Positions 29,844 to 62,654 of a stretch of 64,000 nucleotides of DNA are shown here, one piece after another. The stretch's first letter is position 1, and every line of letters starts with the position of its first letter. Source of the stretch: Mustelus asterias (taxonomy: Eukaryota); the NCBI RefSeq assembly GCF_964213995.1, contig NC_135808.1:7192001-7256000 (forward strand), in the 5' to 3' direction. The notes under the pieces are model-generated. The model was not told the origin of the DNA. It saw only the letters and a list, made by a program, of their open reading frames with translations, and did not search any database. Made by a program: the position numbers and the translations under genes.

Positions 29844-29886
29844 ATGTTATGGGATGGATTCATTTGGTCATTGCTGTTATTCTGGA
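29844..29886 (+). CDS. NCR3: NCR3/NKp30-like gene A, leader exon (MLWDGFIWSLLLFW, phase 1)
   Basis: Acceptor ttttccctttattgcag ends at 29829; gccATG at 29844; hydrophobic 14 aa; donor A|GTAAGT at 29887. Homologous 43-nt coding segment in gene B; splices in frame to the V exon. Confidence 0.85.
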
Positions 29887-32800: not shown

Positions 32801-33512
32801 CCTAAAACATGGGGTGGCCATGCTTATCGTGAACTTTAGTTGAACGATATACAGGTTAGGTGGATTGGCCATGCTAAATTTCCCAACAGTGTCTTAAGGT
32901 ATGTAGGTTAGATGGATTAGCCATGGAAAATGTGTGGGGTTGCGGAGATAGGGCGGGGAAGAGGGCTGGGTAAAATACTCTGTCACAGAATTGGTGCAGG
33001 CTCGATGGGCTGAATAGCCTCCTTCTGCTCTGTAAGGATTTTATGATTCTATAACCAACACTTTAAAATAGAACTTCTTCAGTGAACTATTTTATACTGG
33101 CCATCGTTGTCTCAAGTAAAGACAGATTACAGGAGCAGGTTATTGAATTCTTTTTGTGCTTGTGGAATTATCTGAGGGTGAGAAAGGGAACTGTCAAATA
33201 GATTGGGAATCTGAATCAAAGGTAGAAAAATTTGGAATTAAGAATCCACTGATTAGAATAGAACCATTGTCCATTTCCAGAAAAATAGCATCTGGTTCAC
33301 TAATGTCTTTTAGGGAAGGAAATCTGCCATCCTTACCTGGTCTGGCCTACATGTGACTCCAGAGCCAAAGCAATGTGGTTGACTCTCAACTGCCCTCGGG
33401 CAACTGGGGATGGGCAATAAATGCTGGCCAGCCAGCGACGCCCATATCCCATAAATGAATAGGAATAGAATAGAGTGGCGTGACTACTCATGAGGACATT
33501 TTGTGTCTACAG

Positions 33513-33866
33513 GAGTTACTGGCTCTAGAGTTACAGTCAAGCAGACACCGACTTTAATCAGCGTTCCCGAAGGCGACACCTTCCACATGGATTGTATCTT
33601 CAGTGAGAATGCGACCAATTCAGGAGATGAAGCCATTGGTTCAGTCACTTGGTATAAAGAATCCAGAACCAGTACAGTCTGCAACAACTGCAGAGAATAT
33701 ATCGGACGTGTTCAGAAATCCGATGTATCTTTCTTTCACAAATTTAAAAATGCATCCATATCAATAACTGAGGTGGAACCGAAAGACACGGGAAGGTATT
33801 ACTGTGAGGTGGAGCTTGCCATTGGTGGAAAGGGGACTGGAGATGGAACAAATGTTACAGTGAAAC
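33513..33866 (+). CDS. NCR3: NCR3/NKp30-like gene A, VJ-type Ig V exon (354 nt, phase 1-1)
   Basis: Acceptor tctacag|GA, donor C|GTGAGT. Canonical V-set Cys...W...DTGRYYC, the NKp30 signature AIGSVTW, and a germline-joined J-like GxGTGxGTxVTV. Confidence 0.93.
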
Positions 33867-36124: not shown

Positions 36125-39100
36125 ATAGAACATAGAACATTACAACGCAGAACAGGCCCTTCGGCCCTCGATGTTGCGCCAACCAGTGAAACCAATCTAA
36201 AGCCCATCTTACCTACACTATTCCAATATCATCAATATGTTTATCCAGTGACTATTTAAATGCCCTAAATGTTGGCGAGTCCACTACTGCTGCAGGCAGG
36301 GCATTCCACGCCCTTACCACTCTCTGAGTGAAGAACCTACCTCTGACATCTGTCCTATATCTATCACCCCTCAATTTAAAGCTATGTCCCCTCGTCCTAG
36401 CTATCACCATCCGAGGAAAAAGGCTCTCACTATCCACCCGATCTAATCCTCTGATCATCTTGTATGCCTCTATTAAGTTACCTCTTAACTTTCTTCTCTC
36501 TAACGAAAACAACCTCAAGTCCCTCAGCCTTTCCTCATGAGACCTTCCCACCATACCAGGCAACATCCTAGTAAATCTCCTCTGCACCCTTTCCAATGCA
36601 TCCACATCCTTCCTATAATGCGGTGACCAGAACTGTACGCAATACTCCAAGTGCGGCCGCACCAGAGTTTTGTACAGCTGCAACATGACCTCCTGGCTCC
36701 GAAACTCAATCCCTCTACCAATAAAAGCTAATACTCCATACGCCTTCTGAACAACCCTATCAACCTGGGTGCCAACTTTCAGGGATCTATGCACATGGAC
36801 ACCGAGATCGCTCTGTTCATCCACACTACCAAGTATCTTACCATTAGCCCAGTACTCTGTAATCCTGTTACTCCTTCCAAAGTGAATCACCTCACACTTT
36901 TCTGCATTGAACTCCATTTGCCACCTCTCAGCCCAGCACTGCAGCTTATCTATGTCCATCTGTAACCTGCAACAACCTTCCGCACTGTCCACAACTCCAC
37001 TGACTTTAGTGTCATCCGTAAATTTACTAACCCATCCTTCTATGCCCTCATCCAGGTCATTTATAAAAATGACAAACAGTAGTGGCCCCAAAACAGATCC
37101 TTGCGGTACACCACTTGTAACTGAACTCCAGAATGAACATTTCCCATCAACCACCACCCTCTGTCTTCTTACAGCTAGCCAATTCCTGATCCAAACTGCT
37201 AAATCACCCTCAATCCCATGCCTTCGTATCTTCTGCAATAGCTTACCGTGGGGAACCTTATCAACCACTTTACTAAAATCCATATACACCACATCAACTG
37301 CTCTACCCTCATTCACCTCTTTGGTCACCTTCTCAATGAACTCAATAAGGTTTGTGAGGCACGACCTACCCTTCACAAAACCGTATTGACTATCCGTAAT
37401 CAAATTATTCCTTTCTAGATGATTATAAATCCTATCTCTTATAATCCATTCCAAAGCTTTGCCCACAACAGAAGTAAGGCTCACTGGTCTATAATTACCA
37501 GGGTTGTCTCTACTTCCCTTCTTGAACAAGGGGACAACATTTGCTATCCTCCAGTCTTCTGGCACTATTCCTGTAGACAATGACGACATAAAGATCAAAG
37601 CCAAAGGCTCTGCAATCTCCTCCCTAGCTTCACAGAGAATCCTGGGATAAATCCCATCCAGGCCAGGTGATTTATCTATTTTCACACTTTCCAGAATTGC
37701 TAACACCTCCTCCTTATTAACCTCAATCCCGTCTAGTCCTATAGCCTGTATCTCAGTATTTTCCTCGACAACATTGTCTTTTTCCTGCGTGAATACTGAC
37801 AAAAAATATTCATTTAGTGCCTCTCCTATCTCTTCAGGCTCCATGCACAACTTCCCACTACTGTCCTTGCCTGGCCCTAATCTTACCCTAGTCATCCTTT
37901 TATTCCTGACATACCTATAGAAAGCTTTAGAGTTTCCCTTGATCCTACCTGCCAAAGACTTCTCATTTCCCCTCCTGGCTCTTCTTAATTCTCTCTTTAG
38001 ATCCTTCCTGGCTAACATGTAACTCTCAAGCGCCCTAACTGAGCCTTCACGTCTCATCTTTACATAAGTCTCCTTCTTCCTCTTCACAAGAGATTCAACT
38101 TCTTTAGTAAACCACGGTTCCCTCACTCGACCATTTCCTCCCTGCCTGACAGGTACATACTTATCAAGGACACCCAGTAGCTGTTCCTTGAACAAGCTCC
38201 ATATTTCAATTGTGTCCATTCCCTGCAGTTTCCTTCCCCAACCTATGCATCCTAAATCTCTCCTAATCGCATCATAATTTCCTTTCCCCCAGCTATAACT
38301 CTTGCCCTTCGGTATATACCTATTCCTTTCCATCGCTAATGTAAACATAACCGAATTGTGGTCACTATCACCAAAGTGCTCCCCTACCTCCAAATCTAAC
38401 ACCTGGTCTGGTTCATTACCAAGTACCAAATCCAATGTGGCTTCGCCTCTTGTTGGCCTATCTACATACTGCGTCAGGAAACCCTCCTGCACACATTGGA
38501 CAAAAACTGACCCATCTAAAATACTCGAACTATAGCTTTTCCAGTCAATATTTGCAAAGTCCCCCATAACAACTACCCTGTTACTTTCGCTCCTATCCAG
38601 AATCATCTTTGCAATCCTTTCCTCTAGATCTCTGGAACTTTTCGGAGGCCTATAGAAAACTCCCAGCTGGGTGACCTCTCCTTTCCTGTTTCTAACTTCA
38701 GCCCATACTACCTCAGTAGACGAGTCCTCATCAAATGTCCTTTCTGCCACCGTAATACTGTCCTTGACTAACAGTGCCATACCTCCACCTCTTTTACCAC
38801 CTTCCCTGCTCTTACTGAAACATCTAATCCTGGAACCTGCAGCAACCATTCCTGTCCCTGCTCTATCCATGTCTCCGAGATGGCCACAACATCGAAGTCC
38901 CAGGTACCAACCCATACTGCAAGTTTACCCACCTTATTCCGGATGCTCCTGGCATTGAAGTATACACACTTCAAACCACCTTCCTGCCTGCCAGTACACC
39001 CCTGCGACGCTGAAACCTTATCCATGACCTCACTACTCTCAACCTCCTGTACACTGGATCTACAATTCAGGTTCCCATCCGCCTGCTGAATTAATTTAAA

Positions 39101-39200
39101 CCCTCCCGAAGAGCATTAGCAAATTTCCCACCCAGGATATTGGTACCGCTCTGGTTCAGGTGTAGACCATCCCGTTGGTAGAGGTCCTACCTACCCCAGA
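36125..39200 (-). mobile_element. Near full-length CR1 ORF2 (APE endonuclease + RT) in intron 3 of gene A
   Basis: 887-aa ORF; the N-terminal NARSIRNK...ISETW motif is in another frame (frameshift near 38.82 kb); premature stop at 36252. Confidence 0.95.
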
Positions 39201-39244
39201 ATGGAATAAATAACTTACTCGAGTGAGTTGTTTTTCTGAAACAT

Positions 39245-40095
39245 GCCATGTACACACAGATACATACACACGCACACATATGCACACACAGACAGAGACA
39301 CACGATCACACACACAGACACATATATAATCATACACGCACATATACACAATGGTGACACACGCAGATGCATACACACCAGCACACAGAAGTACACACAG
39401 ACACGACACACAACAGACACATACAGGCACATACGTATAGACACACACACATAGGCACACGGACACAGACACAATCACACACTTCAGCACACACACCGAT
39501 ACAGACACAGGCAGACATACATAGATATCTACAGACACACATACAGGAATACATAAAGGCATGCACACAACACACAGACACCTACATACACACACGTATA
39601 CACACACAGAGACATAGACACACACACAATTATATTTACATGCACATGCACATATGCATACATATAATCACACACACATGCAGACACAAACAGACAAATG
39701 CAGATACATGCAGACCCACACACAGAAATACATACTGACATGTGCACACAACACGCACACATAGACACATACACACATACGTGTATACACGCACACAATC
39801 ACACATTTATGCACAGACTTACATGCAGACATACATGCAATCACACACATACATGCACAAACATGCACACATACATACAGACCCATACACTGAAATACAT
39901 ACAGACACGCACACACAACACACATGCACAGACACACACATGTATACACACAGAGATACAGACATACAGAGAATCACTCACACATGCACACTCTCACATG
40001 TGGACACACATAGAATAACACACACTTACAGACATGGACAGACACATACAGATACATACAGACCCACACACTGAAATACATACAAAGACACATAA
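39245..40095. repeat. Degenerate (CA)n-rich low-complexity tract
   Basis: Directly visible; source of the His/Thr and Cys/Val ORFs. Confidence 0.95.
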
Positions 40096-40483
40096 ATGAA
40101 AGAATAAAAAAACTCTTGCACAGCACATGGTGTAACACTTCATCTCCGATAACCGGCCACGCTGAAATCTATAGGTTTATAATACACAGCCTTATATTCA
40201 CTGAACTCTCGTTTCCCCGTAGCTTTATCTGCTGGCCATCTTTGGCCCGTGGCTGTGTACTCAGTTGACACTTTTTGAACTGAAACTTACCGCTAACTAA
40301 AGCATGCGACAGCACAAGCTAGCACGCAAAACACTTTGTTTCCTTTATCTGCTCACCATCTTCGTGTTGTGGCGCTCTGCACCGAAGCTCGCGGAAGTTT
40401 TCTCAAATAAAGCATACAGTTAACATCAAAAGCAGAATGGAGGAAAGAAAAGCTGTTTTTTTTTGTTTGTTTTCTCTCTGTAG

Positions 40484-40608
40484 GTCGCGTTTATTCTGAA
40501 GTGACATCGCCTTCAATTCAATGGAACGTTTATCGGCTCATAGTGGCAGCGTTGGTGCTGGTGTTGCTGACATTCATCCTTTGGATGGCACGGTGGCACA
40601 GTGGTTAG
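40484..40608 (+). CDS. NCR3: NCR3/NKp30-like gene A, stalk/TM exon ending in a SINE-derived stop (RRVYSEVTSPSIQWNVYRLIVAALVLVLLTFILWMARWHSG*)
   Basis: Strong acceptor tttctctctgtag at 40483; phase 1 matches the V exon; TM Arg (CGG 40534-40536); in-frame TAG 40606-40608 lies in the SINE head. The spliced protein is 173 aa. Confidence 0.85.
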
Positions 40609-40903
40609 CACTGCTGCCTCACAGCTCCGGCGACCGGGGTTCGCATTCCAGCCTTGGGTGACTGTCTGTAGAGTTTGCATGTTCTCCCCGTATCTGCGTG
40701 GGTTTCCTCCGGGTGCGCCGGCTTCCTGCCAGATTCCAAAGATGTGTGGGTTATGTGGATTGGCTATGCTAAATTGACCCTTCGTGTCAGGGGGATTAAA
40801 CAGGGTAAATACTTGAGATTACGGGTATAGAGCCTGGGTGGGATTGTTGTTAGTGCAGGGTCGATGGGCTGAATGGCCTTCTTTTGCACTGTAGGGATTC
40901 TAT
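40583..40903 (+). mobile_element. HE1/V-type tRNA-derived SINE inserted in the TM exon of gene A
   Basis: A/B-box head (ggcacggtggcacagtggttagc...gggttcg), central V-domain, CR1-type tail gcactgtagggattctat. Confidence 0.95.
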
Positions 40904-43900
40904 AAATTCTATTCTATTTTCAAATTTCCTCCTCACTGCTGCGGACCTCTAACTAATTATACTAAATTTAACTTGATTACTACATAGAATAAGTTACTGC
41001 AGATCTATATCTTCCCTGCAGTGTGTTGAATACTGTATATGTAAAAGAACGCCGCGGTTAATTTAGCTCACGTTGCGATGTATCTAAAGCGACAGTAAAC
41101 TAAAATGATGGATAATCAAAATGTCAGCGTTGGCTATCATGATTTTCTTTAACAAATGCAACTGAACAAGGCCATTGTTTGAACTTTGCATATTTTGAAA
41201 TCACAAATACTATGGTTTGTGCCATAGGTGTATTTTGATTACCGCAGAAACAATTAATGGAAAGACCGACATGGTCACATCTCCAGAGACATCTCCGGAT
41301 TCGATTCCCAGCTTGGGTCACTGTCTGTGCGGAGTCTGCACGTTCTCCCAGTGTCTGTGTTGATTTGCTCCGGGTGCTCGGGTTTCCTCTCACACTCCGG
41401 GTTAGGTGGATTGGCCATGTTAAATGCGCAGGGTAACTATTATAGGGCGGGTGAGTGGGCCTCGGTCGAGTGCTCTTTCACAGGGTCGGTGCAGACATGA
41501 TTGGGGAATGATTGGGATTTTGTGCGCTATGTGTTCGGCGAAAGGGGCGTGAAGAAGGCACAGGGACTGGGCAATTGGCCACCTGCGATGCTGTGTTCTA
41601 TGATTCTATGACAAAACCAAGTACTGTCGCCTCATGCTCCACGCGATGAGAGAGACCGTGACCAATCTCTCTCGCAAATAAATTTTCTTAGAAATCCATC
41701 GTTGCTTCAATTGACTTGACATAGATAGATTTGGGAAGCTTAGGGAGAAAGCAGCCAATGTTGCCGAGTCCAGGAAGAAACGTGAATCTTAAAACAAGAT
41801 ATAGCTTGCGCTTACGTAGAGCTTTCCACCGTGTTGAATATCCCAATGTGAATCACCGGAACATTATCAAGCACTATCGTGAGATATTCCAGCAACTTAA
41901 CCGACAGCTGGGATGAACTGATAGACTCTAAGGAGAATCTTAAATGAGGAATGAGAGAACGTGAGGCTGAAAGAGAAGGAAAGGTGAATGGGAAATTGTG
42001 TTATAACTAACTATGTTTCAGTTAGTTACAAGAATGAAAAAAAATGACTGCTACCCACCATTGTGCGCCACCGTTGTCACGTATTAATTATTGATTGAAT
42101 GTTTTCACTGCGTTGAATTACAGTCTGGTCATCAAAATTGCAGAAGTAACGCTTACCTAATTGTGCATCCGAGTAAACCTCAGAATGTTTCACGTGTTTA
42201 TAGCATTTTTAATCCATTTGCTCCAGGCTTTGCGGATCACAGTGTTTTTGTCACATCATATACAAGGTCTCAAGCAATGGTGAGCTGAGAAACTATATGG
42301 CCGGAATTCTCCCATCCCGCCCGCCACTGGAATTTTAGCGGGCGAGTTGCTGAGCATGTGAAACGCCATTGACGGTCGGCTGGGAATTTCTGGCTTTAAG
42401 ACCAGCGCGGCTGGAGAATTCCCTATTCAAAATGAAAGTCTATGTTAAGGAAAGAGCAGATTTTCTCCTAAAGTTTTCACTTCTATTGATCACTCCAATA
42501 TGCTATTTTTGGGCTATTACTGTTCTTCCAGCTTGAAAATACGTAATCAATTTAAAATGTCGTATAGGTCAAAGAATAAAACAGGGAATCCAAGTTGTAA
42601 ATACGGTATGTGATAAATCTCAATGAAAACCACCAGTTTGATTTGCACTGTGGTTAACTGACATTGAATGTGGCTATTTTTGAGGAAGAAAGATGCAAAG
42701 CTAAGTTTCACGATGAATATGATTGGAATAGAGGAGAACAGAAGTAAGATCGAGCGATTCGTGAACGCAAGTTTGGGATGTGGCTTTTTTTTTCATTCTT
42801 GGGACATGAGCGTCGCTGGCTGGCCAGCATTTATTGCCAATCCCGAGCCACCCTTGAGAAGGTGGTGGGGAGCCGCCTTCTTGAATCGCTGCAGTCCACG
42901 TGCTGCGGGTTGACCCACAATGCCATTAGGGAGGGAATTCCAGGATTCTTACCCAGCCATTGCGAAGGAACGGCGATATATTTCCAAGTGAGAATAGTGA
43001 GAGGTTTGGAGAGCCGAGTGTCAACTAGGCTGCAGCAGGAAATGGAGGTAGATAGAGAAATCACCCAGGCGCGGTGAATCAGCATGCTGTTAACAAATGG
43101 ACGTGTTTTTCAAATGCTTTCTAAGAAATCCGAAAAAGTTAGGATCGGGGGTGAGAGAGACTGAGGCACAACACTAGCATTATGCAAGAGCTTCAAATTG
43201 AATACTTGTATTGATGCCTGCTTGACGTTAAACCCAAATTCTATGGACGTTTCCCGTGATGCATTTAACAATGTCAAATTGGAACACATATGTGGCAATA
43301 TATTAATGCCAGGCCGTAATAGCATAAGGCGTGGGTGGAGAAGTCGGTCATTCGGCCCATCGAGTCTGCTCCGCCATTCAATGAGATCATGGCTAACCTG
43401 ATAAGATATTTCTCGACTCCACATTCTCGCTGTGTCCCCAAAGCATTCCCTTACTGATTAAAAATCCGTCCACCTCAGGCTTTAACATACTTAACGACCC
43501 AACTTCTGCAAACTTCTGCGGTAAAGAATTCTACAGATTCACTATCGAAACGAGTACTGCTTTTCGTTATTTACCCTTGAAACAGCCTTGTACCACATTT
43601 ATTAGTTTTTGTCTCGAAATGTTCAGAGTTCTGCCAACCTTTAGTTCGTTCGTTGAAATAACCTACCAGCCCCCACATATATTTCTTATCCGATTATAAC
43701 GAGAACTTTAGTCTTTATAGTCTTTAGTCCATTGCATGGGATATTGCCTGCGAGGTGTGTTCATTTGTTCCCGTATTATATGAGCGATTTTCTGCTCTAA
43801 ATATATCTCTTATTGCAGATAACCCCACTGCATGTATCTTATATGGGGACTCGAACTTTTTCTCTTGTTGCCAACTTGCCACGCTTTGTGAAAGGAGTTA

Positions 43901-45672
43901 TTGACAATTGCCGTGTTCACGCTGCCAAGGTCGAGATTCTTTTGGGAGTTTGACCTTTGTAAAGTGGGCGCAAGCTGACCCATGTTCTCGAACCTGGCAG
44001 GGCATTGTGTTAATCCTTTTTATCAGTGCATCGTCCTGTTAACCGTTTGCAAATCCAAACTGTCATTTGCTGTCCCAAAGCTGTCTGTGCGGAGTTTGTA
44101 CATTCTCCCCGTGTCTGCGTGGGTTACTTCCGGGGGCTCCGCTTTCCTCTCACCGTCCAAAGATGGGCGGGTTAGGGTGAATTGGCCATGTTAAATTGCC
44201 CCTTAGTGTCAGGGGGGCTAGCTAGGGTAAATGCATGGGGTTATGGGGATCGGGCCTGGGGGAGATTATGGTCGGTGCAGACTAGATGGCCGAATGGCTT
44301 CCTTCTGCACTGTAGGAATACTATGAATCTAACATCATGGAACAGTGAACAGTGTAATCAGTGTAATCATAATTAAATACCAATATACAGTCAAAAGAAA
44401 AATGTTTCCAGAGGGCGGCACGGTAGCACAGTGGTTAGCACTGCTACTTCACAGCTCCAGGGACCTGGGTTCGATTCCCGGCTTGGGTCAATGTCTGTGT
44501 GGAGTTTACACATTCTCCTCGTGTCTGCGTGGGTTTCCTCCGGGTGCTCCTGTTTGCTCCCACAGTCCAAAGATGTGCGGGGTATGTTGATTGGCCATGC
44601 TAAAATTGCCCCTTAGTGCCCTGAGGTGCGTAGATTAGAGGGATTAGCGGGTAAAATATGTAGGGATATGGGGGTAGGGCCTGGGTGGGATTGTGGTCGG
44701 TGCAGACTCGATGGGCCAAATGGCCTCTTTCTGCACTGTAGGGTTTCTATGATAAGGAATCGCCAGGTTCGCCATATTGCTCCGTGTAATTTCCATTACG
44801 GATTTGAATTAAAAGATACTCGGTACAAGTTAAAAGATCAACCATTGACTCGAAGTTAATAACAATAGAAGATAGTAGTGGAGCTGTTATAGACTTTTAT
44901 ACGCTGAAGCAATTGCATGATCACCTGTAGTGTGACTTAACATAACCACAATATTTGTTCAAAAGATTGAAGGGCGGAGACATGTTGGGAAACTATAATT
45001 TATGAGAAGCTGAACGTCAGTCAATCAAGCAGCCACCCTCCTGATGCGATTGTGTGCAAGACAACGAGGCCACGCGTACAGAGTAAAAACTCACAGCGAG
45101 AGGGGCGGTGTCACTCCCAGAGCAACAATGGAGAATCTCAATTGCAGACATTGTATAAATTGTAACCAGGCTTGGAGGCGGCTATCAGCATCAACAGAAG
45201 TCGCCTTGATGCTTAACACCCATTCTAATAACGATTGAGTTGGATTATTTTTTCTGACCTTCACAGTTTTAAAGTTTAAAGTTAGGATTGGACTTTAATA
45301 AATTGCTACTTGAAAGTTCTGCATATTTAAACATAATAAGTATTCTTGTCCTTGATTGCGAAGGTGTGCTGAAAGTAATGTTTGTATCAGTAATTTGATT
45401 GATTGATTCGACGCGAGAATGATTCCTTCTCACCAAGTTCAAAGCGCCATACATTAAGGTTGGACACTGGTTTCTTGTCGTTCTTTTCCGAACCAAACTT
45501 GTTATATTTCGCTGTATTTGTGACTCCTAATCAGTATTCTTCCAGTTTCATGTATTTTTTCGAAGTGCAAGTTTATTAACCAAGGTTTATAATCAATAAT
45601 TTGTTATGCGACCTCGAGATAGTCCGAGATAAGGACTATGGACGTCGGATGTAACAAGAGAAATGTAGCCCA

Positions 45673-47439: not shown

Positions 47440-49630
47440 TTTGCCCTCTTTTTAGGTCAAACCAAATATACAAACTCAGATTAAGTCAGGACAAAGTAAA
47501 AGGGGCAGCTCCCAAAAAAGGAGGGGGAACAGCCCGAACAGAAATCAAAGTACAAAGGAAACTTAAAAACATCAAATTAAAATGTGATTATTAGGGTCGA
47601 TAACGCACCCCAACCCCTGCGGTGCCCAACGGGCGCGGAAGGTGTCAAGTGTGCCCGTGGACACCGCATGCTCCCTCTCCAGGGACACCTGGCCGTGAAC
47701 GTCGCCGCGGTAGAGGGGCAGACAGTCAGGATGGACGGCCCCCTCGATCGCCCGCTGCCTGGACTGTTAAATGGCGCGTTTCGCCAGGCCCAGGAGCAGG
47801 TTCACGAGGAGGTCACCATCCCAACCCTCCTCTCTCCGCACCGGGTGTCAGTAGATCAGGAGCGTGGGACTGAAGTGCAAACAAAACATCAATAAAAGGT
47901 TCTTTCGGAAAACATAAAGGGAGTGCAGCCTAAGACACACAACATAGACATGGTCCACGGACTCCAGAAGGCCACAGAAAGGGCAGTCTTCGGAGCCCGT
48001 GAACCAGTGAATCCTACGGTTGTGTGGAACTGCTGCATGCATCACCCTCCACCCCAGGTCCCCGACGTAATTGGGGAAATCCCGCCGTAGAGGGACCTCC
48101 AGTGGGGACCTCCGCCGGCCGGCGGTAACAAGGCCCGCCAAGGTGTATCCGGGCGACAGGCGAGGAGGCAGTAGTGGAAGGTGTGCAGCAGCAGCCCGCA
48201 CAGGAAACGCCTCCGCGCAGTAGAAAAAGGCACGGAGGACATTTCCGCGAGACGGCTCAGGCTGTGGGGCACCTCACCCAGGGAGGGGGGTTGAGGTTTT
48301 GGGCCAATGTGGAATTCCGCCTGAACAGGGGAACGCTCGGGCGGGATCCCACCGCACGCCTGCGCCGCCTCGAGTTTGCGTGCAGTTTCGGGGCGAAGCA
48401 TGACTGTCCTACGGTTTAGGATGGCTTTGGCCACGTGCCAGACGATCGTCCCCGCGCGCTCAGCCAGCATGCGGGGACTCATCCAGCCCGCCCCTCCACC
48501 ATCGAGCATGGCCCAATTCTGGTCACCCCGGCGTCCACAGCCCTCCTCTCTGCCAGCCACCTAAAGTTATACGGCTGGAGGAGCGGATTCCTGAGCAGCA
48601 GCTCTCGCACAAGAGCCGCTACTCCTGATGGGGGGGAGCTGCATCGCGAGGCGACCGTGTTCCAGACAGTGAGGAGGTCCTGGTAAAAGACGGGCAACTC
48701 CTGCAGGGCGGTCGAAGCACGCCCCTGTTCGATATGCAGGAGCTGCACGTCATAATTGAGGCCGTGCCACTGGCGGAAGAAATACGTCGCCATGGCACAC
48801 CATTGTGGAGGGGGCTCAATGTAAAGGTACCTCTGCAGGGCCTGGAGGCGGAAGGTCGCTATCTGAGTGCGGAGGCGCACCAGACCTTGTCCACCCTCCT
48901 CAAGCAGGAGATGCAGAACTGCAGCAGGGACCCAGTGCAGTCGATTGTCCCAGAAGAACTGCAGGAGGGTTCTCTGGATATCGGTGACAAAGTCAGGGGG
49001 AGGGGTCAAAGGGACCAGCCGGTACCACAGCATGGAAGCGACCAGCTGGTTTATGACGCGAACTCGGTCCCCACTCCTGTCCAGCGATTTAGGCGGGTGG
49101 AGACTTTGGCCTCCAGCTCCCGCCAGTTCGCCGGCCAGGACTCTTCGGCTGGGCAGAGATGGGCCCCCAAGTAGAGGAGGTTGGTCCTGCTCCAGGTGAA
49201 AGGCCTGAGCTCCTCCGGAAGGGGATCCATCTCCCAAGGACCGACAAGGATTCCAGAGCACTTGGCCCAGTTGATCCTGGCGGAGGACGCAGCGGAGTAC
49301 ACCGCCTGGCATTCTCCCATCCTCCGCAGGTCAGCCGGGTCCATGAACATGAGGAGCACGTCATCGGCGTAAGCTGACAGGACCACCCCTATGTCCGGTC
49401 TGCGCAGGGCCAAACCTGACAAGCTCCTCCGCAAGAGGCGCAGGAATGGCTCCACGAATATGGAATACAGTTGGCCGGACAAGGGGCAGCCCTGCTGTAC
49501 TCCTCTCCCAAAGTGAAGGGGCGCCGTCAGGGACCTGTTAACCTTAATCAGACACTCTGCGGCAGAGTACAGTAATCGGATTCGGGCGACAAAATGCGTC
49601 CCGAACCCGAATGCCCGCAAAGTCCCTGTA
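47440..49630 (-). mobile_element. Tx1/L1-clade non-LTR retrotransposon, 5'-truncated and frameshifted
   Basis: RGVQQGCPLS and AYADDV RT motifs; C-terminal CPFCG..ESVDH...C zinc motif; GC-rich. Confidence 0.88.
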
Positions 49631-49804
49631 CAATACAGTCCAACATTCCCGTAGCTTTTCCAATCGTTTACAATGCCTCTATGGTGAATTCCTGTGTTAC
49701 TTGTGTGCACCAAAGCATCTGCAAAGATTAACATTTGCCACTCTTACATCGTTTTAGAAAATCTCTTTTCTATTGTTCTTTCCAAAGTGAATAACTCATT
49801 TTCT

Positions 49805-50165
49805 GATCAGGGCCAGTGTGATCTCCTGGACTCGTTTCGATCGCCTCAGGGGGTCGGAGAGGAATTTCCCAGATTTTCTTTCCCCATATTGGCCCTGGGG
49901 TTTTCACTCTGGGTTTTCGCCTTTCCCTGGAGATCACATGGTCTGGAATGGGGGGGGTGGGGGTGAGTTAATAGGTTGTGATGAACAAAGCATCGTAGCT
50001 GTGAGGGACAGCTCGGAGGATAGGATATTAGGATGTAGATAGGCTGGAAAATTGGGCGGGGATCCTGGATTCAGGATTCAATCCTGGACCGGGGAGCGGC
50101 GCGGGCTTGGAGGGCCGAAGGGCCTGTTCCTGTGCTGGATTGTTCTTTGTTCTTGGTTGTTCTTT
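49805..50165 (+). mobile_element. CR1-type 3' UTR fragment
   Basis: Ends in gggccgaagggcctgttcctgtgctg plus (ttctttg)n, as in the 15.45-kb CR1. Confidence 0.65.
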
Positions 50166-55075: not shown

Positions 55076-55118
55076 ATGCTATGCAACAGAATCGTTTGGT
55101 CATTGCTGTTGCTCCCTC
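55076..55118 (+). CDS. NCR3: NCR3/NKp30-like gene B, leader exon (MLCNRIVWSLLLLP, phase 1)
   Basis: Acceptor tttgtccacag ends at 55061; gccATG; donor C|GTAAGT; same length and phase as in gene A. Confidence 0.85.
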
Positions 55119-55364
55119 GTAAGTAATCTGCACCCGGGCTCTCTTATGTGTCTATGAATAAGCATATGTACACACACGCATACACACAGAGTTACACATC
55201 CACACGGATACTTGTTATCGAGGTTTATGCACCCATTTATACGCATATTGTATATCTACTTATATTAGATACAAACATTTAAATATTTCACGCAGAGGCA
55301 TCGATACACACATCTGTAAACATATCATCTACATTATTCAGATACGTACTTCATATAGAGGTAT

Positions 55365-55634
55365 AAATGCATATGCATGAACATATTGCACACACACACA
55401 TCCACACGCACAGATACGCACGCACACATACTCCCACATGCATGTGCACACACATACATATACACAAATGAACACGCACACATGCCAACATACACACACA
55501 CACACACACACATACACTCAGGCACACACGGACACATCCATACGCTCAAACGCACACACATAGGCACATACACCAACACACACACAGACACACACAAACA
55601 CACACACACACACACACACACATACACACACACA
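55365..55634. repeat. Degenerate (CA)n microsatellite region in gene B intron 2
   Basis: Directly visible. Confidence 0.95.
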
Positions 55635-56648
55635 GGACGTACTGGCAAATAACTGAAGCCCCTCATCCCGAGAACCATTCTCGTGAATCTTTTTCGCAAT
55701 TTCGTCAAGTCATTCAAATCATTTTTGGGATGCCGGAATGGCGTATGGGGAGAGATTGGGTCCATTCGGATCACAGAAGAGTTCAGATGGAGCTCAGACA
55801 AATGTGGGGTGATCTCATAGATACCGATAATATTCTAACAGGACGAGACAGGCAGGAAGGGATATTCCCGATGGTGGGGTGTCCAGAACCAGGGGACACT
55901 GCCTAAGGATACAGGATAAACAGTTTAGGTCTGAGATGAGGAGGAAGTTCTTCACTCAGAGAGTGGTGAGCCCGTGACTTCGCTAGCACAGAAAGCAGTT
56001 GAATGCGAAACATTGTATGTTTTCAAGAAGGAATTAGGTATAGCTCTTGAGGCTAAACGGATCAAATGATATTGAGGAGAAGCGGGAATAGGGTACTGAG
56101 TTGGATGATCAGCAATTAATATAATGAATGATGGGAAAGGCTGGAAGGGCTGAATTGCGTATTCCTGCCCCTCTTTTCTATGTTCCTATGTTTGTAAAGT
56201 GCGATGGCCAAAATATTATTTTACACAGGGTTGAAATAACCTATGTGCCCCATTAATAAATGCTGTATACTTCATTAACTCCCATTCTGCCACCTTCAAT
56301 GACTTACGTACATACACATCGGGGTGGCTCTGTTCCTACAGACTTGGACCCTTTATTTTTCTCTTGGTTCTTCGTGTTTTTTCTACCAAAACGAATCACT
56401 TCACAATTCTCTGCGTTAAATTAAACCTCCCATTTGACCTCCGGTTCCAGCAAACTGTCCATATGCCATTTCGAACTCCTCCACTATCCTCATCGCCCTT
56501 CACAATGCTTTCAAATTTTTTATGGTCCACAACTTTAGAAAATTGTGCATTGTGAATCAAGGTCATTTATACATGCAATGTCACAGGTTTCTTATTCCTT
56601 GTCGCTCTTTGGCGATTGTGCAGAGACGGAGCTGCAACTCCTCCTCGC

Positions 56649-56723
56649 AACAATGTAGCGTGGAGCGACTATTACTGAGGTTATTGCATGTTTACCGGAG
56701 TTACCGACTCTAGAGTTACAGTC
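56649..56723 (+). pseudogene. Truncated relic of an NCR3-like V exon 5' end with a dead acceptor
   Basis: tgtttaccg|gagttaccgactctagagttacagtc matches the start of the gene B V exon (tgtttacag|gagttactgactctagagttacagtc), with AG changed to CG. Homology stops after about 9 codons. Confidence 0.8.
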
Positions 56724-58379
56724 TACCAAGCAAGGATCGAGAATGATAAGGATTGTTGATCCTGTTTCCCTCTTTGCGATTAGGCGGACATTCTAATTTG
56801 TCTTTATATGCGCAAGAAGAGTCTGGCTAAAAAAAAGACAGGTAACCACTAAGACTTAATATTTTCGACTCGCTGGCTGGAGTGAAAACCTGGAGTGCGC
56901 TTGACCTCTTGCCGAAAAAGTGCCCGATTTTCCTACAATTTGGATTCTAATTCATCACCAGTTTTTTTATACGCGCCTAGTTTGTAACGTAGCCCTCCCA
57001 GCTCGTGTAAGATAGCATTTGCATTAAAGCGTAATATTCACGCTTCTGACCTGCTTTCGGCAACACAGTGGAGCCAATGACATACTTGCAAGTAGAGACT
57101 TCAATTGTTCTGCAGCAGCTGCCGTCAGCGCCAGTTAAAACGCATTGTAGTCAATTCCCATTAAATAAAGGGCAGCTTCAGTCTCATTGCTCCTCTTTAT
57201 TTGTGGTTTAGACTGAGGGGTGGAAAGAAAAGTCTCAGACAGCAGACTCTAAGATAGATTGCACATCAGAAATAAAGCTGGAAAATATCACGCGGAATTC
57301 AGGCATTACTCAGTGTACACTCAGGTCGGGCAATGGCTGGCGAGAAACAGGGAGACAGAGCGAGAGACTCTCCGCCCTGTCTCCCTGTGTGGTGGCGCGT
57401 TGTTTGCCAGCGGCAGGATTCACTGGTGCCACCGCTGTCAATGGGGAGGCGATGGCCTAGTGGTATTTTCGCTAGACTATTAATCCAGAAACTCAGCTAA
57501 TGTTCTGGGGACCCGTGTCCGAATCCCACCATGGCGGCTGGTGGAATTTGAATGCAACACAAAATACCTGGAATTAAAAATCTATTGATGACTATGAAAC
57601 CATTGTCGATTGTCGGAAAACCCCATCTGGTTCACCAATGTCCTTTAGGAAAGCAAATCTGCCGTTCTTACCTGGTCTGCAGTTCATATGACTTCAGAGC
57701 CATAGCAATGCAGTTGACTCTCAACTACCCTTGGGCAACTAGGGGTGGACAATAAATGCGGGTCCAGCAAGCCATGCCCATGTTCCATGAACGAATGAAA
57801 AAATATCCCATTGACGTTACCCCATGCCAGCAAGAAACCGGCGGGAGAATCCCGCCAGTGTGAATGGCAAAAGAATGGCGGCCAGGATCTTTTAGGCTTA
57901 AGTGTTAATTTTACTTATTAGTTTCAAAGTAGTCTTACATTGACACTGCAATGAAGTCATTGTGAAAAGCCCTCAGTCGCCACACTCCGACGCCTGTTCG
58001 GGTACACTGAGGGAGAATTCAGCATTGCCAATGCACCCTAACCAGCACATCTTTCGGACTGTGGGAGGAAACCGGAGCACCTGGAGGAAACCCACGCAGA
58101 CACAGGGAGAAGGTGCAGACTCCGCACAGACAGTGACCCAAGCCGGGAATCGAACCCGGGTCCCTAGCACTGTGAGGCAGCAGTGCTAACCACTGTGTCA
58201 CCATCCCATAAATCGATGACCCTTCTTCAGAAAACTGAAACGTTAAAATGACCCGTTGTGCAACTGAATTGCTTGTTGCTGTTAGCTGTGATATCCATTT
58301 CAGAGCCCAATGTTTCTGTAACTCAAAACCAACAATGTCGAGTGGCCTGACTGTTAATGAGGACATTTTATGTTTACAG

Positions 58380-58733
58380 GAGTTACTGACTCTAGAGTTA
58401 CAGTCAAGCAAACACCGAACTCTGTCAGTGTTAAACAAGGCGACACCTTCCATCTGTATTGTAGCTTCAGTGAGAATGCGACCGATTCAAGAAACGAAGC
58501 CATTGGTTCAATCACTTGGTATAAAGATTCCCGAACCTGTAAAGTCTGCAACAACTGCGGAGAATATATCGGACGTGTTCAGAATTCTGATGTATCTTCC
58601 TTCCGCAAATACAGAAACGCATCCATATCAATAACCGATGTGAACCTGAACGACACAGGGAAGTATTACTGTGAGGTGGAGCTTCTGATCGGCGGAAAGG
58701 GGACCGGAGAAGGAATAGATGTCACAGTAAATA
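58380..58733 (+). CDS. NCR3: NCR3/NKp30-like gene B, VJ-type Ig V exon (354 nt, phase 1-1)
   Basis: Acceptor tttacag|GA, donor A|GTGAGT; AIGSITW, DTGKYYC, GKGTGEG. 32 of 118 aa differ from gene A (manual count). Confidence 0.93.
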
Positions 58734-61700
58734 GTGAGTTTGTGTTGCACGTGTAACCGCACGTTCTTTCCAAATAAACACGTAAATGGGAATTAGGGAT
58801 AATTAATCCTCCCGCACATTGAAAGTCTGCCACGCTGGGTCCTGCCCACACAAATTGTACGCTTACGAGATCGGATGCAACCCTCAGGGTTTCACTCTGT
58901 CCGAGTTTACTATGCTTCTACAATAGTGGAGGAGATTTCTGGGCCAGGTATAAAGCCGGCAGTCACAGCAGCATAGAATGGTTTCAGCTCCCGGTGTCTG
59001 TGCAGGCTCGTTGTGCAAGCTCACTTCTGGAGCAACACAATGTGCCCCAATCCCTGGCACTTTTCTGAAACCGTATCACATTCTATTTTGAACGTTAGAA
59101 CCTTATTTAATTCTCTTTTAAAACTCAGAATTAGCTGCCTCCAACACACTCTGAACCAGTGGACCCCAGATCCTAACCACTCAGTGCGTGAAATGAATGC
59201 TTTATTTCCCTCATGCCCTTGTTGGCTCGTTGGCGGATCACCTGAAATCCATCTCATCTCCTTCTCGACACTATCATAATAAGGAGCAGTTTCACTCCAA
59301 CTAGTCTGTCCAGATCCTCGTGATTGTGTACGCCTCTATGATATCTCTTTTTAACCTCTCTCCTTCGAGGAGAAACAAGCCGAGAGGGTTCTCCAATCTG
59401 TCCACTTACTGAAGTCTCTCAAACCTGGAAATATTTTTGTAAATCGTTTCTGCATACTCTGCAAAGCCTTAACATCGTTATGGAAAGTTTGGCACCCAGA
59501 ATTGGGAACAATGCCCCAGTTGAGGCCGAACTGGCGTTTTTTTTTAAATCGCCATAGCTTCCTTACTTCTGCATTCAATGCCTCCGTTTAAAAAGCCTTG
59601 AATGCTGTATGCCTTGCGAATCACTTTCTCAACTCGCCCTGGTAATTCCATCGATTTCTGCACATATGCCCTCATAGGGGATTTTCACTTCATTGCAGTG
59701 TTAATGTAAGCCTACTTGTGACACTAATATTTTTTAAAAATTCATTCGTGGGACATGGGCATCGCTGACTAGGCCAGCATTTATTGCCCATCCCTAGTTG
59801 CCATTGAGAAGGTGGTGGTGAGCAGCCTTCTTGAATCGCTGCAGTCCATGACAGCGGACTGCAGTCCATGACATTAACTTAACTTTAACTCACATATTTC
59901 CTGTCCCTCCATGTGTCCCGCCCTCCTGACAATTCAGCGATGCATCTCAACTGTCCCTGGGGAACTTTCAACTTAAAGTGAGTTGGCCTATCGAATACTG
60001 CCCTTTACAATTTTTTTGCTACCATATCCAGAAACTTCATTATCTCATCTTTAGTTCCGACTTTGGCATCATTGTCTTCCTTATTAATAACACATACAAA
60101 ACATTAATTTGTTCCTCAGCCATTCCTTATACCTCCATGCATAGATCACGTCTTTAGTCCTTAATCGCCCCGACCCTTGCCCTACTCACCAGTTTCTATT
60201 AAAGTGCTTGTAGACTTTTGGATTCCTTCATGTTAGCTGCCAATCACTCCTTATGGTTTCCCTTCGCCTCTTCGATTTCCTTTTTTCTCTCTCTTTCTTC
60301 CTATTTTCAGTCTGCTTCTTATTTGTATTGATACTAAATTAAGAACAGACAGTCAACCATAATTTATTCCCTACCTCATCATGCAGCGAGTGCTAATATT
60401 GTTTGTCCTGATTGTTTCCCTTGTGGGATTTTATTTCTATTCATTCGTCGGACATGGGCATCACTGCCTGGTCAGCATTTAATGCCCATCCCAAGTTACC
60501 CTTGGGAAGGTGATGGTGAACTTCCTTTTTGAAACGATGATACAACGGAATGGCTTGCTAGGCCATTTCAGAGGGAAGTTGAGAGTCAACCACATTGCTG
60601 TGGCACTGGAGTCACATGTTGGCCAGAACAGGCAAGGACGGCAGATTTCCTTCCCTAAAGAATATTACTGAACCAGATGGGGTTTTCCAACAATCCACAA
60701 TGGTTTCATTGTCATCAGTACATTCTTAATTGCTTATATATTTTTTATTGAATTCAAATTCCACCACCTGCATGGTGTGATTCGAACCCTCCCCAGAACA
60801 TTAACTGAGTTTCAGATGAATAGTCATGTAGGTAGGCATAGGTATTAAAGCTATAAGTTCATGTTACATTCTGCAAAAATACCCAGCTGCTGTTACATAA
60901 ACACGAACAGAGCGAAATAGGAGCAGCAATTGGTTATCATTGGATTGTGGCTCCAACGTCACATCCCGCCTGCCTACCATGACTCTGATTCCCTTGTTAA
61001 CCACGACCACATTACAGTGGAATGGGTGAAGCTATACGAACTTCATTTCTAGAATAATCCTAATGTAAAAAAAGTGACGGAAAAGTAAACTCGACTTGGC
61101 GATCCTTTCTGCATTATTTGTTGTGACGTGACGACAGTGTGACAATAGTTGCCACAAGGGAGTCATCCTTCCAAGAATTGGAATGAGACAAGTCAGAATA
61201 GAAAGGAGGATTCTAGTCAGGTGGGGATTCACCAGACCATTCTCTTTCTACATGTCTGATATCAAGAAGCTGTATTGGCGAAATAGGCAAACAAAATATT
61301 GAAACACACTTTCCTCTCCACCAGCAGAAATAATAACATGGCAGTAAGAACATAGATTGTCACAGCCAGCTGCTGAGTCAGAACTCGAGATATCCTCAGG
61401 GATGTCAAAATACAGCAATAAAAATTCAGGCTCCAGCTCATGGTAAAGAAATAATTTATTTGTATGCCAAACAAATTCGAGAGAGGGGTGTGGGGGCGGT
61501 TGGGGGGGGGGGGCGTGGGGGTGGAGGAGGATGGGGTGGGGAGAGAGAGAGAGAGCTGTGCAGAACATTGTACAATTGCTCACTTCACCATCCCCCTACA
61601 ATCAACCAAACGATCTCCGAGGAAATCTTGTATTCACCGAACTGGCACATTCTACTGGCTTTATCTGCTCACCATCTCTCTGCACCAATGCTCTTGACTC

Positions 61701-61952: not shown

Positions 61953-62090
61953 GTCATGTTGATTCTGAAGTGACAACGCCTCCAAGCCAATGGAACACAT
62001 ATCTGCTTATTATCTCAGTGCTGGCCTTTGTGGTACTCGCTCTCATCCTAACTAAACTAATTTTTATTCTGCAATGCTGTGGACCACCAG
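61953..62090 (+). CDS. NCR3: NCR3/NKp30-like gene B, stalk/TM exon (SHVDSEVTTPPSQWNTYLLIISVLAFVVLALILTKLIFILQCCGPP, phase 1-1); gene continues beyond the window
   Basis: Acceptor ttttctctctaaag, donor CAG|GTAATT, no stop; homologous to the gene A TM exon but with Leu (CTG 62003-62005) in place of Arg. Confidence 0.85.
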
Positions 62091-62654
62091 GTAATTATTC
62101 TGAATTCAGCCTATTTTACAACAAGGCATGAATGACTATTTGTCTGAAGAATAGCATGGCTGATCTATGGCTTACATTGTTATACACTTACAATGTCTCT
62201 GAAATAATCAGCATGATTAATAATTGCAGTAATACCAGTATTTCCATGAATGTTCTTATTTTCCAAAAGGAATTTTTAAAGTTAAATGTTTATTTATTAG
62301 TCACAAGTAAGTCTCACATTAACACTGCAATGAAGTTACTGCTAAATTCCCCTAGTCGTCACTGTCCGGCGCCTGTTAGGGTCAATGCACTTAACCAGCG
62401 CGTTTTTCAGAATGTGGGAGTAAACCCAATCACCCAGAGGAAACCCGTACAGATATAGGGAGACTGTACACAGATAGCCACCCAAGCTGGGAATCGAACC
62501 TGGGTCCCTGGCGCTGTGAAGCAGCAGTGCTAACCACTGTGCAACCATGCCGCCCACTAGTTACGTTAAATTTAGAAAATTATTTATAACCTTGCATAAC
62601 TTGAAGCTGCAAATATCATGGGTCGTGTCATAGGTATATATTAATTATATAGAA

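What the first reader, a model, noticed from the sequence alone, without database searches (positions are those of the whole stretch)
40484..40990. A SINE inserted inside the TM exon supplies gene A's C-terminus and stop codon
Seen: the reading frame runs from ...LTFIL into the SINE head (W-M-A-R-W-H-S-G-TAG at 40606). Beyond the SINE the rest of the exon survives as TGC TGC GGA CCT CTA A|ctaattatact, versus gene B TGC TGT GGA CCA CCA G|gtaattattct, so the donor has changed GT>CT at 40953. The SINE-derived residues complete the hydrophobic span and add a basic stop-transfer-like residue. Inference: TE exaptation fixed a short-tailed receptor, as needed for an Arg-bearing activating form. Without the SINE the dead donor would read through to CCGPLTNYTKFNLITT*, so the order of events is open. 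The alternative is that gene A is a recent pseudogene.
Basis: partly seen in the sequence, partly recalled or inferred. Interest (0 to 1): 0.82.

Follow-up and report, generated by a model that had tools for sequence, protein, structure and literature searches.

The report
SINE-truncated NKp30-like shark receptor gene
A mobile element sits inside the membrane-anchor exon of a shark immune-receptor gene and cuts the protein off just after the membrane span, leaving either a tail-less receptor or a dead gene; the rest of the gene is intact, but no RNA data were available to decide.

Summary
Gene A has three exons with canonical splice sites: leader 29844-29886, V 33513-33866 and a membrane exon from 40484. 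The frame runs into a high-copy SINE at about 40583 and stops at TAG 40606, giving 173 codons. The rest of the exon survives at 40919-40952, and its donor is CT instead of GT.

The family is NKp30-like (NCR3-like). Gene A's membrane exon is of the inhibitory type, like gene B and two long-tailed shark relatives. A relic tail exon with an ITIM lies 4.4 kb downstream at 44973-45165.

The insertion looks old: 5-12% diverged, with 4 indels. A neutral-decay simulation gives 0.0003-0.024 for the upstream coding sequence staying intact over that time. A 578-nt contig from another species matches only the exon, starting exactly at 40484, and keeps the Arg codon. It is probably a spliced transcript.

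No RNA run of this species was on record, and the look-up of encoding contigs, the only route to orthologous loci, was closed.

The best reading is a tail-less receptor (confidence 0.45). A pseudogene is the main rival (0.33). The "activating" claim is unsupported: the Arg lies at the membrane edge, and the short-tailed relatives seen here, including nurse-shark NKp30, use a different Lys-bearing span.

The parts
29844..29886 (+). Gene A leader exon. ATG at 29844, signal-peptide-like MLWDGFIWSLLLFW, ends in phase 1, donor A|GTAAGT.
   Evidence: tblastn with the N-termini of P0002 and P0006; sequence read.
33513..33866 (+). Gene A V exon. 354 nt, phase 1-1, acceptor cag|G, donor C|gtgagt. V-set domain with a J-like GKGTGDGT motif.
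   Evidence: V-set E 1.1e-12. NKp30 is the best solved relative of gene B's paralogous V domain. 61% identity to the Heterodontus NCR3-like protein P0002.
40484..40582 (+). Host-derived part of gene A's stalk and membrane exon. Carries the derived Arg codon CGG at 40534-40536.
   Evidence: tblastn to gene B's exon and to P0002.
40583..40918 (+). SINE in sense orientation. Head with pol III box-like motifs and an ATTCT-type tail. The 3' limit and the target-site duplication (TTT or CTTT) are uncertain by a few bases.
40606..40608 (+). TAG stop inside the SINE head. It ends the 173-codon reading frame.
40795..40800 (+). ATTAAA hexamer inside this SINE copy, 187 nt after the stop. The window consensus reads ATTAGC here. 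A possible poly(A) signal, untested.
   Evidence: The number of such hexamers after the stop (3 in 2.4 kb) is about what I estimate by hand for chance.
40919..40952 (+). Remainder of the exon beyond the SINE (FKFPPHCCGPL). Two codons shorter than gene B, P0002 and P0006 between the Lys and the CC motif.
40953..40954 (+). Former splice donor, now CT. Gene B has GT at 62091-62092.
41677..41682 (+). First canonical AATAAA after the stop.
44973..45165 (+). Relic cytoplasmic exon of gene A. Frame open for 63 codons, with ITIM IIYEKL and a second Tyr (TLYKL) just before TAA. A possible phase 2-2 exon (ag|G ... TT|gtaacc).
   Evidence: tblastn with the P0002 tail, E 8.7e-6, and the P0006 tail, E 6.7e-4. 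Sequence read. The splice phases are my own reading.
55076..55118 (+). Gene B leader exon. 43 nt, donor C|gtaagt.
58380..58733 (+). Gene B V exon. 84% nucleotide and 73% amino-acid identity to gene A's V exon.
61953..62090 (+). Gene B stalk and membrane exon. No SINE, Leu where gene A has Arg, ends ...QCCGPP G|gtaatt.

Best explanation
Gene A is a paralogue of an inhibitory-type, NKp30-like (NCR3-like) single-V receptor.

A SINE landed in sense orientation in its stalk and membrane exon, immediately after 15 hydrophobic residues. Translation now takes W-M-A-R-W-H-S-G from the SINE head and stops. The predicted product is a 173-residue type I protein with an 18-19 residue span and a five-residue basic tail. 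It is cut off from the ITIM exon(s) that still lie downstream.

**Shown**
- The anatomy.
- The homology of each part.
- The age-like divergence of the SINE.
- The intact upstream exons.

**Inferred**
- The truncated gene is still expressed and kept by selection as a tail-less receptor. It would act as a non-signalling competitor or decoy of gene B, or less likely as an adaptor-coupled activating partner through the Arg.
- The membrane exon has become the terminal exon, so the stop would not trigger nonsense-mediated decay.
For: 1. **The upstream gene is intact.** The ATG, signal peptide, both donors, both acceptors and 496 nt of coding sequence upstream of the SINE are all intact.
2. **The SINE looks old.** It differs from the window consensus at 41 of 319 positions, or 11-12% outside CpG. 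It has 4 indel events and 16 of 319 private changes.
3. **Neutral decay should have broken the gene.** The simulated chance that the upstream coding sequence and splice dinucleotides stay intact is 0.024 at K=0.05, 0.003 at K=0.08 and 0.0003 at K=0.118.
4. **Constraint on the coding sequence.** dN/dS between A and B is 0.47 for the V exon and 0.37 for the pre-SINE membrane exon.
5. **The part after the stop has decayed.** It shows a two-codon loss, two prolines and a lost donor.
6. **A probable spliced transcript in another species.** Record 9 of run X3 is a 578-nt contig from organism B. It lies only on 40484-40585 (10 differences, no gaps) and starts exactly at the acceptor, with no coverage of 40457-40483. 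No difference is listed at the Arg codon, which lies in the part of the piece where differences are listed.
7. **The predicted C-terminus can span a membrane.** The best 19-residue window has mean Kyte-Doolittle 2.55, against 2.86 in gene B.
Against: - No RNA run of this species is on record. Expression, the 3' end and use of the stop are all unobserved.
- The SINE age rests on a crude consensus of 14 window copies. At K=0.03 the intactness probability is 0.11, which is not significant.
- Gene A's V domain carries more lineage-specific amino-acid changes than gene B's: 11 vs 8 and 10 vs 3 with two outgroups, and 7 vs 2 where both outgroups agree. None is significant, and this fits some relaxation of constraint.
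- The downstream ITIM exon is still open. That has probability 0.055-0.28 if it has been unused over K=0.05-0.118.
- The X3 run is only guessed to be RNA. Its contig is 90% identical, so it could be a paralogue. It ends 2 letters past 40585, so it does not show whether that species has the SINE.
- TE insertions in coding exons of multigene immune families are usually disabling.
Confidence: 0.45

Rival explanations
1. Gene A is a pseudogene. The SINE insertion, the donor loss, or both killed an inhibitory receptor copy, and the intact V and leader exons have simply not decayed yet.
For: - There are two lesions relative to the ancestral architecture: a SINE in the exon and a CT donor.
- The relic ITIM exon shows that the ancestral product was long-tailed.
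- Gene A's V domain has more unique changes than gene B's, 7 vs 2 where both outgroups agree.
- There is no RNA evidence.
- Among 150 listed representatives, no hit of 165-185 aa reaches 50% identity, and the nearest relatives are long-tailed.
- If the SINE is younger than it looks (K about 0.03), intactness is unremarkable at 0.11.
Against: - The upstream coding sequence and four splice dinucleotides are intact, with P = 0.024 or less for K of 0.05 or more.
- dN/dS is below 1.
- Identity to the outgroup P0002 is no lower for A (61%) than for B (59%).
- A probable spliced transcript of a gene-A-like, Arg-bearing exon exists in another species.
Confidence: 0.33
2. Gene A still makes a long-tailed inhibitory receptor. 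A donor upstream of the TAG is spliced to the downstream tail exons, so the SINE stop is bypassed.
For: - The ITIM exon at 44973-45165 keeps an open frame, a perfect ITIM and plausible ag/gt borders.
- Two GT dinucleotides in the required phase 1 lie just before the TAG: 40601 GTGGTT and 40604 GTTAGC.
Against: - Both candidate donors are poor matches to the donors actually used at this locus (GTAAGT, GTGAGT, GTAATT).
- No intermediate exon was found between 40953 and 44973.
- The original donor was allowed to decay.
- An open 189-nt frame is not rare by chance (0.055-0.46).
Confidence: 0.1
3. The insertion is a recent or rare polymorphic null allele, or an assembly error.
For: Only one sample (X4 and X5, the same sample) holds the stretch, so fixation is untested.
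Against: - The copy is 13% from the consensus, with 4 indels and 16 private changes.
- The host sequence beyond it has decayed.
- Contigs of the sample cross both SINE borders with 0 differences. No SINE-less joint is among the 15 joints shown, though 667 were not shown.
Confidence: 0.03

Closest known systems
NKp30 / NCR3 and the shark 'NCR3-like' genes
   Same: - One V-set domain with the J-like G-x-G-T motif, encoded in a single exon, and a leader / V / stalk-membrane exon plan.
- Human NKp30 is the best solved-structure match, at E 1.3e-10.
- The nearest protein is named natural cytotoxicity triggering receptor 3-like in Heterodontus francisci (61% identity).
- NKp30 signals through a membrane Arg that pairs with CD3-zeta or FcR-gamma (PMC6514059, section 6, passages read).
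   Different: - Genes A and B are not orthologues of NKp30 proper. Nurse-shark NKp30 (P0053, 170 aa) is 36-39% identical and has a different, Lys-bearing span and a short tail.
- A and B belong to a long-tailed, ITIM-type lineage.
- Gene A's Arg sits at the outer edge of the span, not within it.
Paired receptors in which an activating or tail-less member arose from an inhibitory one by tail truncation (KIR2DS/3DS, LILRA, SIRP-beta, PILR-beta; recalled, not searched here)
   Same: - Two tandem paralogues with similar ectodomains (73% amino-acid identity).
- One is long-tailed.
- The other is predicted to have a short tail and a derived basic residue in or at the membrane span.
   Different: - The truncation here comes from a SINE inside the exon, not from a point mutation, frameshift or exon loss.
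- Adaptor pairing is untested.
- Expression is untested.
Transposon exonization giving truncated immune-receptor isoforms, for example the truncated IFNAR2 isoform (PMC10515820; search listing and start of abstract seen)
   Same: A TE supplies the C-terminal coding sequence and the stop. This uncouples the ligand-binding part from the signalling tail and gives a potential decoy.
   Different: - There, an intronic TE is used as an alternative exon beside the full-length form, with RNA and functional proof.
- Here, the TE sits in a constitutive exon, the full-length route appears lost (dead donor), and there is no RNA evidence.
HE1 / V-SINE family of sharks and rays (PMC3747384, table read: tRNA-derived, partner LINE HER1)
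   Same: - A high-copy short retroposon in an elasmobranch-like genome.
- Pol III box-like head motifs (TGGCACAGTGG, GGTTCGATTCC), recognised by eye.
   Different: - Identity with published HE1 was not tested, because no reference sequence was on hand.
- ARAGORN and Rfam find no tRNA in it.

Membership tests
NKp30-like (NCR3-like) VJ-type single-V receptors | One V-set Ig domain with an unsplit J-like G-x-G-T-x-V-T-V end | tested here: met
   Pfam V-set at E 1.1e-12 for gene A and 5.2e-13 for gene B. NKp30 is the best PDB match and the motif is aligned.
NKp30-like (NCR3-like) VJ-type single-V receptors | The nearest named relatives are NCR3 or NCR3-like | tested here: met
   P0002, NCR3-like of Heterodontus francisci, is 61% identical. 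Of the 11 names looked up, 4 are NCR3 or NCR3-like, 4 are uncharacterized and 2 are pIgR-like multi-V proteins.
NKp30 proper (orthologue of NCR3) | Short tail and a basic residue inside the span, as in nurse-shark and tetrapod NKp30 | tested here: not met
   Gene A's span is homologous to the inhibitory type (gene B, P0002, P0006). No Lys-type span exon was found in the window. Identity to P0053 is 36-39%.
NKp30 proper (orthologue of NCR3) | Linkage to the MHC | not tested
   No MHC gene was looked for in the window. PMC10751288 (passages read) places NKp30 in the MHC.
Activating member of a paired receptor | Basic residue in the span that pairs with an ITAM adaptor | tested here: inconclusive
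   A derived Leu-to-Arg change gives NVYRLIV, while gene B, P0002 and P0006 have Leu. It lies at the outer edge of the span. Pairing cannot be tested by sequence.
Activating member of a paired receptor | Short cytoplasmic tail without ITIM | tested here: met
   The predicted frame ends five residues after the span. This holds only if the mRNA is as predicted.
Activating member of a paired receptor | Inhibitory partner with an ITIM tail | not testable with these tools
   Gene B's tail lies beyond the window (note s1-890421, unchecked). The relatives P0002 and P0006 carry Tyr motifs such as TVYAAV and IVYATV.
Exapted (exonized) transposable element | TE sequence present in the mature mRNA and translated | not testable with these tools
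   No RNA run holds the stretch.
Exapted (exonized) transposable element | Gene kept under purifying selection after the insertion | tested here: inconclusive
   The neutral-decay simulation gives 0.0003-0.024 for K=0.118-0.05 but 0.11 at K=0.03. The relative-rate counts lean the other way.
Exapted (exonized) transposable element | Insertion fixed and shared by related species | not testable with these tools
Pseudogene | Further disabling changes outside the first lesion | tested here: not met
   There is no stop, frameshift, lost ATG or lost splice site in the leader, V or pre-SINE membrane exon.
tRNA-derived SINE (HE1-like) | Recognisable tRNA-related head | tested here: not met
   ARAGORN finds 0 tRNA genes in the window. 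Rfam gives 0 matches at E of 1 or less on 40400-41100. Only the box-like motifs are seen by eye.
tRNA-derived SINE (HE1-like) | High copy number with a common head, body and tail | tested here: met
   14 heads and 30 HSPs in 64 kb. Alignment of 11 copies.

The most novel reading that the evidence does not exclude
A SINE insertion converted an inhibitory NKp30-like receptor into a conserved, expressed, tail-less partner. Its derived membrane Arg recruits an ITAM adaptor. It would be an activating receptor born through a transposable element in a cartilaginous fish and shared by more than one shark species.
Probability: 0.18. Interest if true: 0.7.

Novelty: new member of a known kind. Interest (0 to 1): 0.42.

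Why it matters
- **If gene A is expressed.** It would be a clean natural case of a transposable element turning an inhibitory immune receptor into a tail-less decoy or activating partner. It would lie in the oldest jawed-vertebrate lineage, in the NKp30-like family that is discussed in the origin of antigen receptors.
- **What it would add.** It would extend TE-made truncated receptors, known from human interferon signalling, to sharks and to insertions in constitutive exons.
- **If gene A is a pseudogene.** It is an ordinary casualty of birth-and-death evolution in an immune gene cluster.
- **Testability.** One RNA-seq or cDNA experiment decides between these.

Tried and rejected
- **Word-indexed protein searches.** The search for homologous proteins with gene A's V exon found nothing. 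This is explained by its length filter, since the relatives are 280-294 aa. With P0002 as query it found only P0002 itself. The third search was left unused.
- **tRNA origin of the SINE.** ARAGORN and Rfam found no tRNA or other RNA family, so "tRNA-derived" is not confirmed here.
- **Alternative activating span exon.** I looked for a Lys-type membrane exon, using the C-termini of P0011, P0035, P0053, P0091, P0122 and P0131. Nothing credible was found.
- **Intermediate exon.** I looked for one between the membrane and ITIM exons, and for tail exons of gene B in 62091-64000. The only shared pieces are repeats.
- **SINE-head peptides in relatives.** 0 of 153 fetched proteins carry them. These are cluster representatives, so this says little.
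- **Poly(A) hexamers after the stop.** Their number is about what I estimate by hand for chance, so I do not count ATTAAA at 40795 as evidence.
- **Papers.** PMC4594805 (Ohta and Flajnik 2015) is not held. The listings show no title on a SINE-truncated NKp30-like receptor in sharks. This is a listing-level check only. Supplementary gene tables of PMC10751288 were not opened and might list these genes.
- **Spliced model.** It was searched exon by exon. The joined protein was sent to no search or fold tool.
Full report
**Observation.**
- An exon begins at 40484 behind a strong polypyrimidine tract and AG.
- Codons from 40486 give RVYSEVTSPSIQWNVYRLIVAALVLVLLTFIL, then WMARWHSG, then TAG at 40606-40608.
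- The last 7-8 residues and the stop lie in a repeated element.
  - Its 39-nt head occurs 14 times in the window with 3 or fewer mismatches, this copy included, against 0 in 100 shuffles.
  - The 330-nt copy gives 30 HSPs, self included.
  - An alignment of 11 copies places the element's start at about 40583 and shows an ATTCT-type tail ending near 40916-40918.
- Behind it, 40919-40952 reads FKFPPHCCGPL in the frame that continues the pre-SINE frame if the element and a TTT duplication are removed.
- The exon end aligns to gene B's ...CCGPP G|gtaattattct at 62075-62101. About 24 of 31 bases agree by my count, and A|ct replaces G|gt.
- DNA contigs of the probable source sample (X4 and X5, one sample) cover 40100-40606 and 40886-41323 without a difference.

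**Gene models.** tblastn with relatives found both leader exons.
- *Gene A:* ATG at 29844, 43 nt, donor A|GTAAGT. V exon 33513-33866, phase 1-1. Membrane exon from 40484.
- *Gene B:* leader 55076-55118, V exon 58380-58733, membrane exon 61953-62090 with donor GT.
- *A versus B:* the V exons are 84% identical in DNA and 73% in protein. The membrane exons match at about 80% over the blastn alignment, which includes 42 nt of upstream intron, and at 70% over the 32 pre-SINE codons. Beyond the exon flanks the introns share only repeats. The duplication is therefore old (dS 0.31).

**Family.**
- Both V exons are V-set domains, at E 1e-12 and 5e-13.
- Gene B's V exon, the one searched, has human NKp30 as its best solved relative, at E 1.3e-10 with the J-like GxGTG end aligned.
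- A full HMMER scan gave 263 proteins at E of 0.001 or less.
- The nearest single-V hits are P0002 and P0006.
  - P0002 has 280 aa, is 61% identical, and is named natural cytotoxicity triggering receptor 3-like in Heterodontus francisci.
  - P0006 has 294 aa, is 53% identical, and comes from Chiloscyllium plagiosum.
- Both have gene-B-like spans (...LLIFSV...K...CCGP in P0002) and long tails with Tyr motifs.
- Nurse-shark NKp30 proper (P0053, 170 aa) and two ray proteins (P0011, P0035) have short tails and a different, Lys-bearing span. They are 35-43% identical to gene A's V domain in the HMMER scan.
- Genes A and B are therefore NKp30-like but not NKp30 orthologues. Gene A's span is of the inhibitory type.

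A frame of 63 open codons lies 4.4 kb downstream of the membrane exon, at 44973-45165.
- It matches the tails of P0002 (E 8.7e-6) and P0006 (E 6.7e-4).
- It holds a canonical ITIM, IIYEKL, and a second Tyr just before a TAA.
- It has plausible ag and gt borders in phase 2-2. That is my own reading.
- Gene A therefore descends from a long-tailed inhibitory gene, and the SINE and dead donor now cut that tail off.

**Age of the insertion.** I compared this copy with a majority consensus of the 14 longest window copies, taken from the 30 HSPs.
- It differs at 41 of 319 aligned positions, which is 11-12% outside CpG.
- It carries 4 indel events.
- 16 of 319 positions are private to it.
- I take K of about 0.05-0.12 as the range since insertion. 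The consensus is crude, and master-copy differences would lower K.
- A recent or rare null allele is unlikely. Fixation could not be tested, because only one sample holds the stretch.

**Is the gene alive?**
- *For.* A neutral-decay simulation used substitutions with ts:tv of 2, and indels at the SINE's own ratio with 20% taken as in-frame.
  - The chance that the 496-nt upstream coding sequence, the ATG and four splice dinucleotides all survive is 0.11 at K=0.03. It is 0.024 at K=0.05, 0.003 at K=0.08 and 0.0003 at K=0.118.
  - dN/dS between A and B is 0.47 for the V exon and 0.37 for the membrane exon.
- *Against.*
  - Gene A's V domain has more lineage-specific replacements than gene B's. 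The counts are 11 vs 8 (p 0.65), 10 vs 3 (p 0.09), and 7 vs 2 where both outgroups agree.
  - The ITIM exon being open has probability 0.055-0.28 over K=0.05-0.118. This mildly favours a younger lesion or continued use.

**Reads.**
- No run on record as RNA holds 40440-41290, so expression in this species is untested.
- One result from read laying is useful. Record 9 of run X3 (organism B, "RNA?" by guess) has 578 nt at depth 11. It lies only on 40484-40585, at record positions 3-104, with 10 differences and no gaps.
- Its match begins exactly at the acceptor, and run X3 has no depth over 40457-40483. The flank upstream of the acceptor is still alignable even between paralogues A and B. A genomic contig should therefore have run on, and a spliced transcript is the simplest reading. 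The remaining 474 nt would fit V + leader + 5' UTR, which is inference.
- All four differences listed in the central part change residues: I to S, W to G, V to A and A to S by my codon count. Two of them restore gene B's base.
- None is listed at the Arg codon 40534-40536.
- The contig ends two letters beyond 40585, at the SINE head, so it does not tell whether that species carries the SINE.

**The activating claim.**
- The Arg (CGG) is derived. Gene B, P0002 and P0006 have Leu at that position.
- NKp30 does signal through a membrane Arg (PMC6514059, section 6, passages read).
- But here the Arg is the first residue of the span, and the span is otherwise of the inhibitory type.
- The short-tailed relatives seen here (P0053, P0011, P0035) use a different span.
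- I put adaptor coupling at about 0.2. A signalling-dead decoy or competitor is the more economical function if the gene is alive.

**Bypass splicing.** Two phase-1 GTs precede the TAG: 40601 GTGGTT and 40604 GTTAGC. Both are poor next to the donors used at this locus.

**Comparison and novelty.**
- TE-made truncated receptor isoforms are known (PMC10515820; listing and start of abstract seen).
- Activating receptors derived from inhibitory ones by tail loss are textbook knowledge, recalled here and not searched.
- What is particular here is a SINE inside a constitutive membrane exon of a shark NKp30-like gene. The stop comes right after a still-usable span, and the former ITIM exon is left stranded.
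- No title in the listings describes this. That is a listing-level check only.

**Limits.**
It looks like an elasmobranch, judged by the repeat family and the protein relatives.

Noticed in passing
window 56656-56729: A stray copy of the acceptor and first about 14 codons of the V exon (MFTGVTDSRVTVYQ) lies 1.65 kb upstream of gene B's real V exon. It matches gene B's own V-exon start at 13 of 14 residues. At DNA level 56656-56723 is 78% identical to 33471-33538 of gene A.
   Followed up: no
window 36252-38915 (-): An open 887-aa reverse-transcriptase/endonuclease ORF of a LINE lies inside gene A's V-to-membrane intron. It accounts for much of that intron being twice as long as gene B's.
   Followed up: no
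window 39187-40074 and 55334-55801: Long imperfect CA/TG-rich low-complexity blocks, giving Cys/Val- or His/Thr-rich pseudo-ORFs. One lies upstream of gene A's membrane exon and a similar one lies in gene B's first intron.
   Followed up: no
window 40795-40800: This SINE copy reads ATTAAA where the window consensus reads ATTAGC, 187 nt after the stop and followed by a GT-rich stretch. It could be a poly(A) signal, but the hexamer count is about what I estimate by hand for chance.
   Followed up: partly
window 40406-40507 and 40916-40966: In the source-sample runs the summed contig depth is 77-151, against about 20 in the neighbouring unique sequence. Runs X1 and X3 also have depth at 40406-40456. 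This suggests a short repeated or low-complexity piece, or paralogous exons elsewhere in the genome.
   Followed up: no
window 47580-49740: A GC-rich block (0.585 in 48001-50000) with overlapping long ORFs on the minus strand, including a YADDVLL-type reverse-transcriptase motif. It is probably a second, older LINE fragment between genes A and B.
   Followed up: no
window 33233-33460 and 57569-57796: The same repeat (80% identical) lies upstream of both V exons, ending 53 nt before gene A's V exon but 584 nt before gene B's, where a further SINE lies between. It recurs at 60571-60762 in reverse. It may have been present before the duplication.
   Followed up: no
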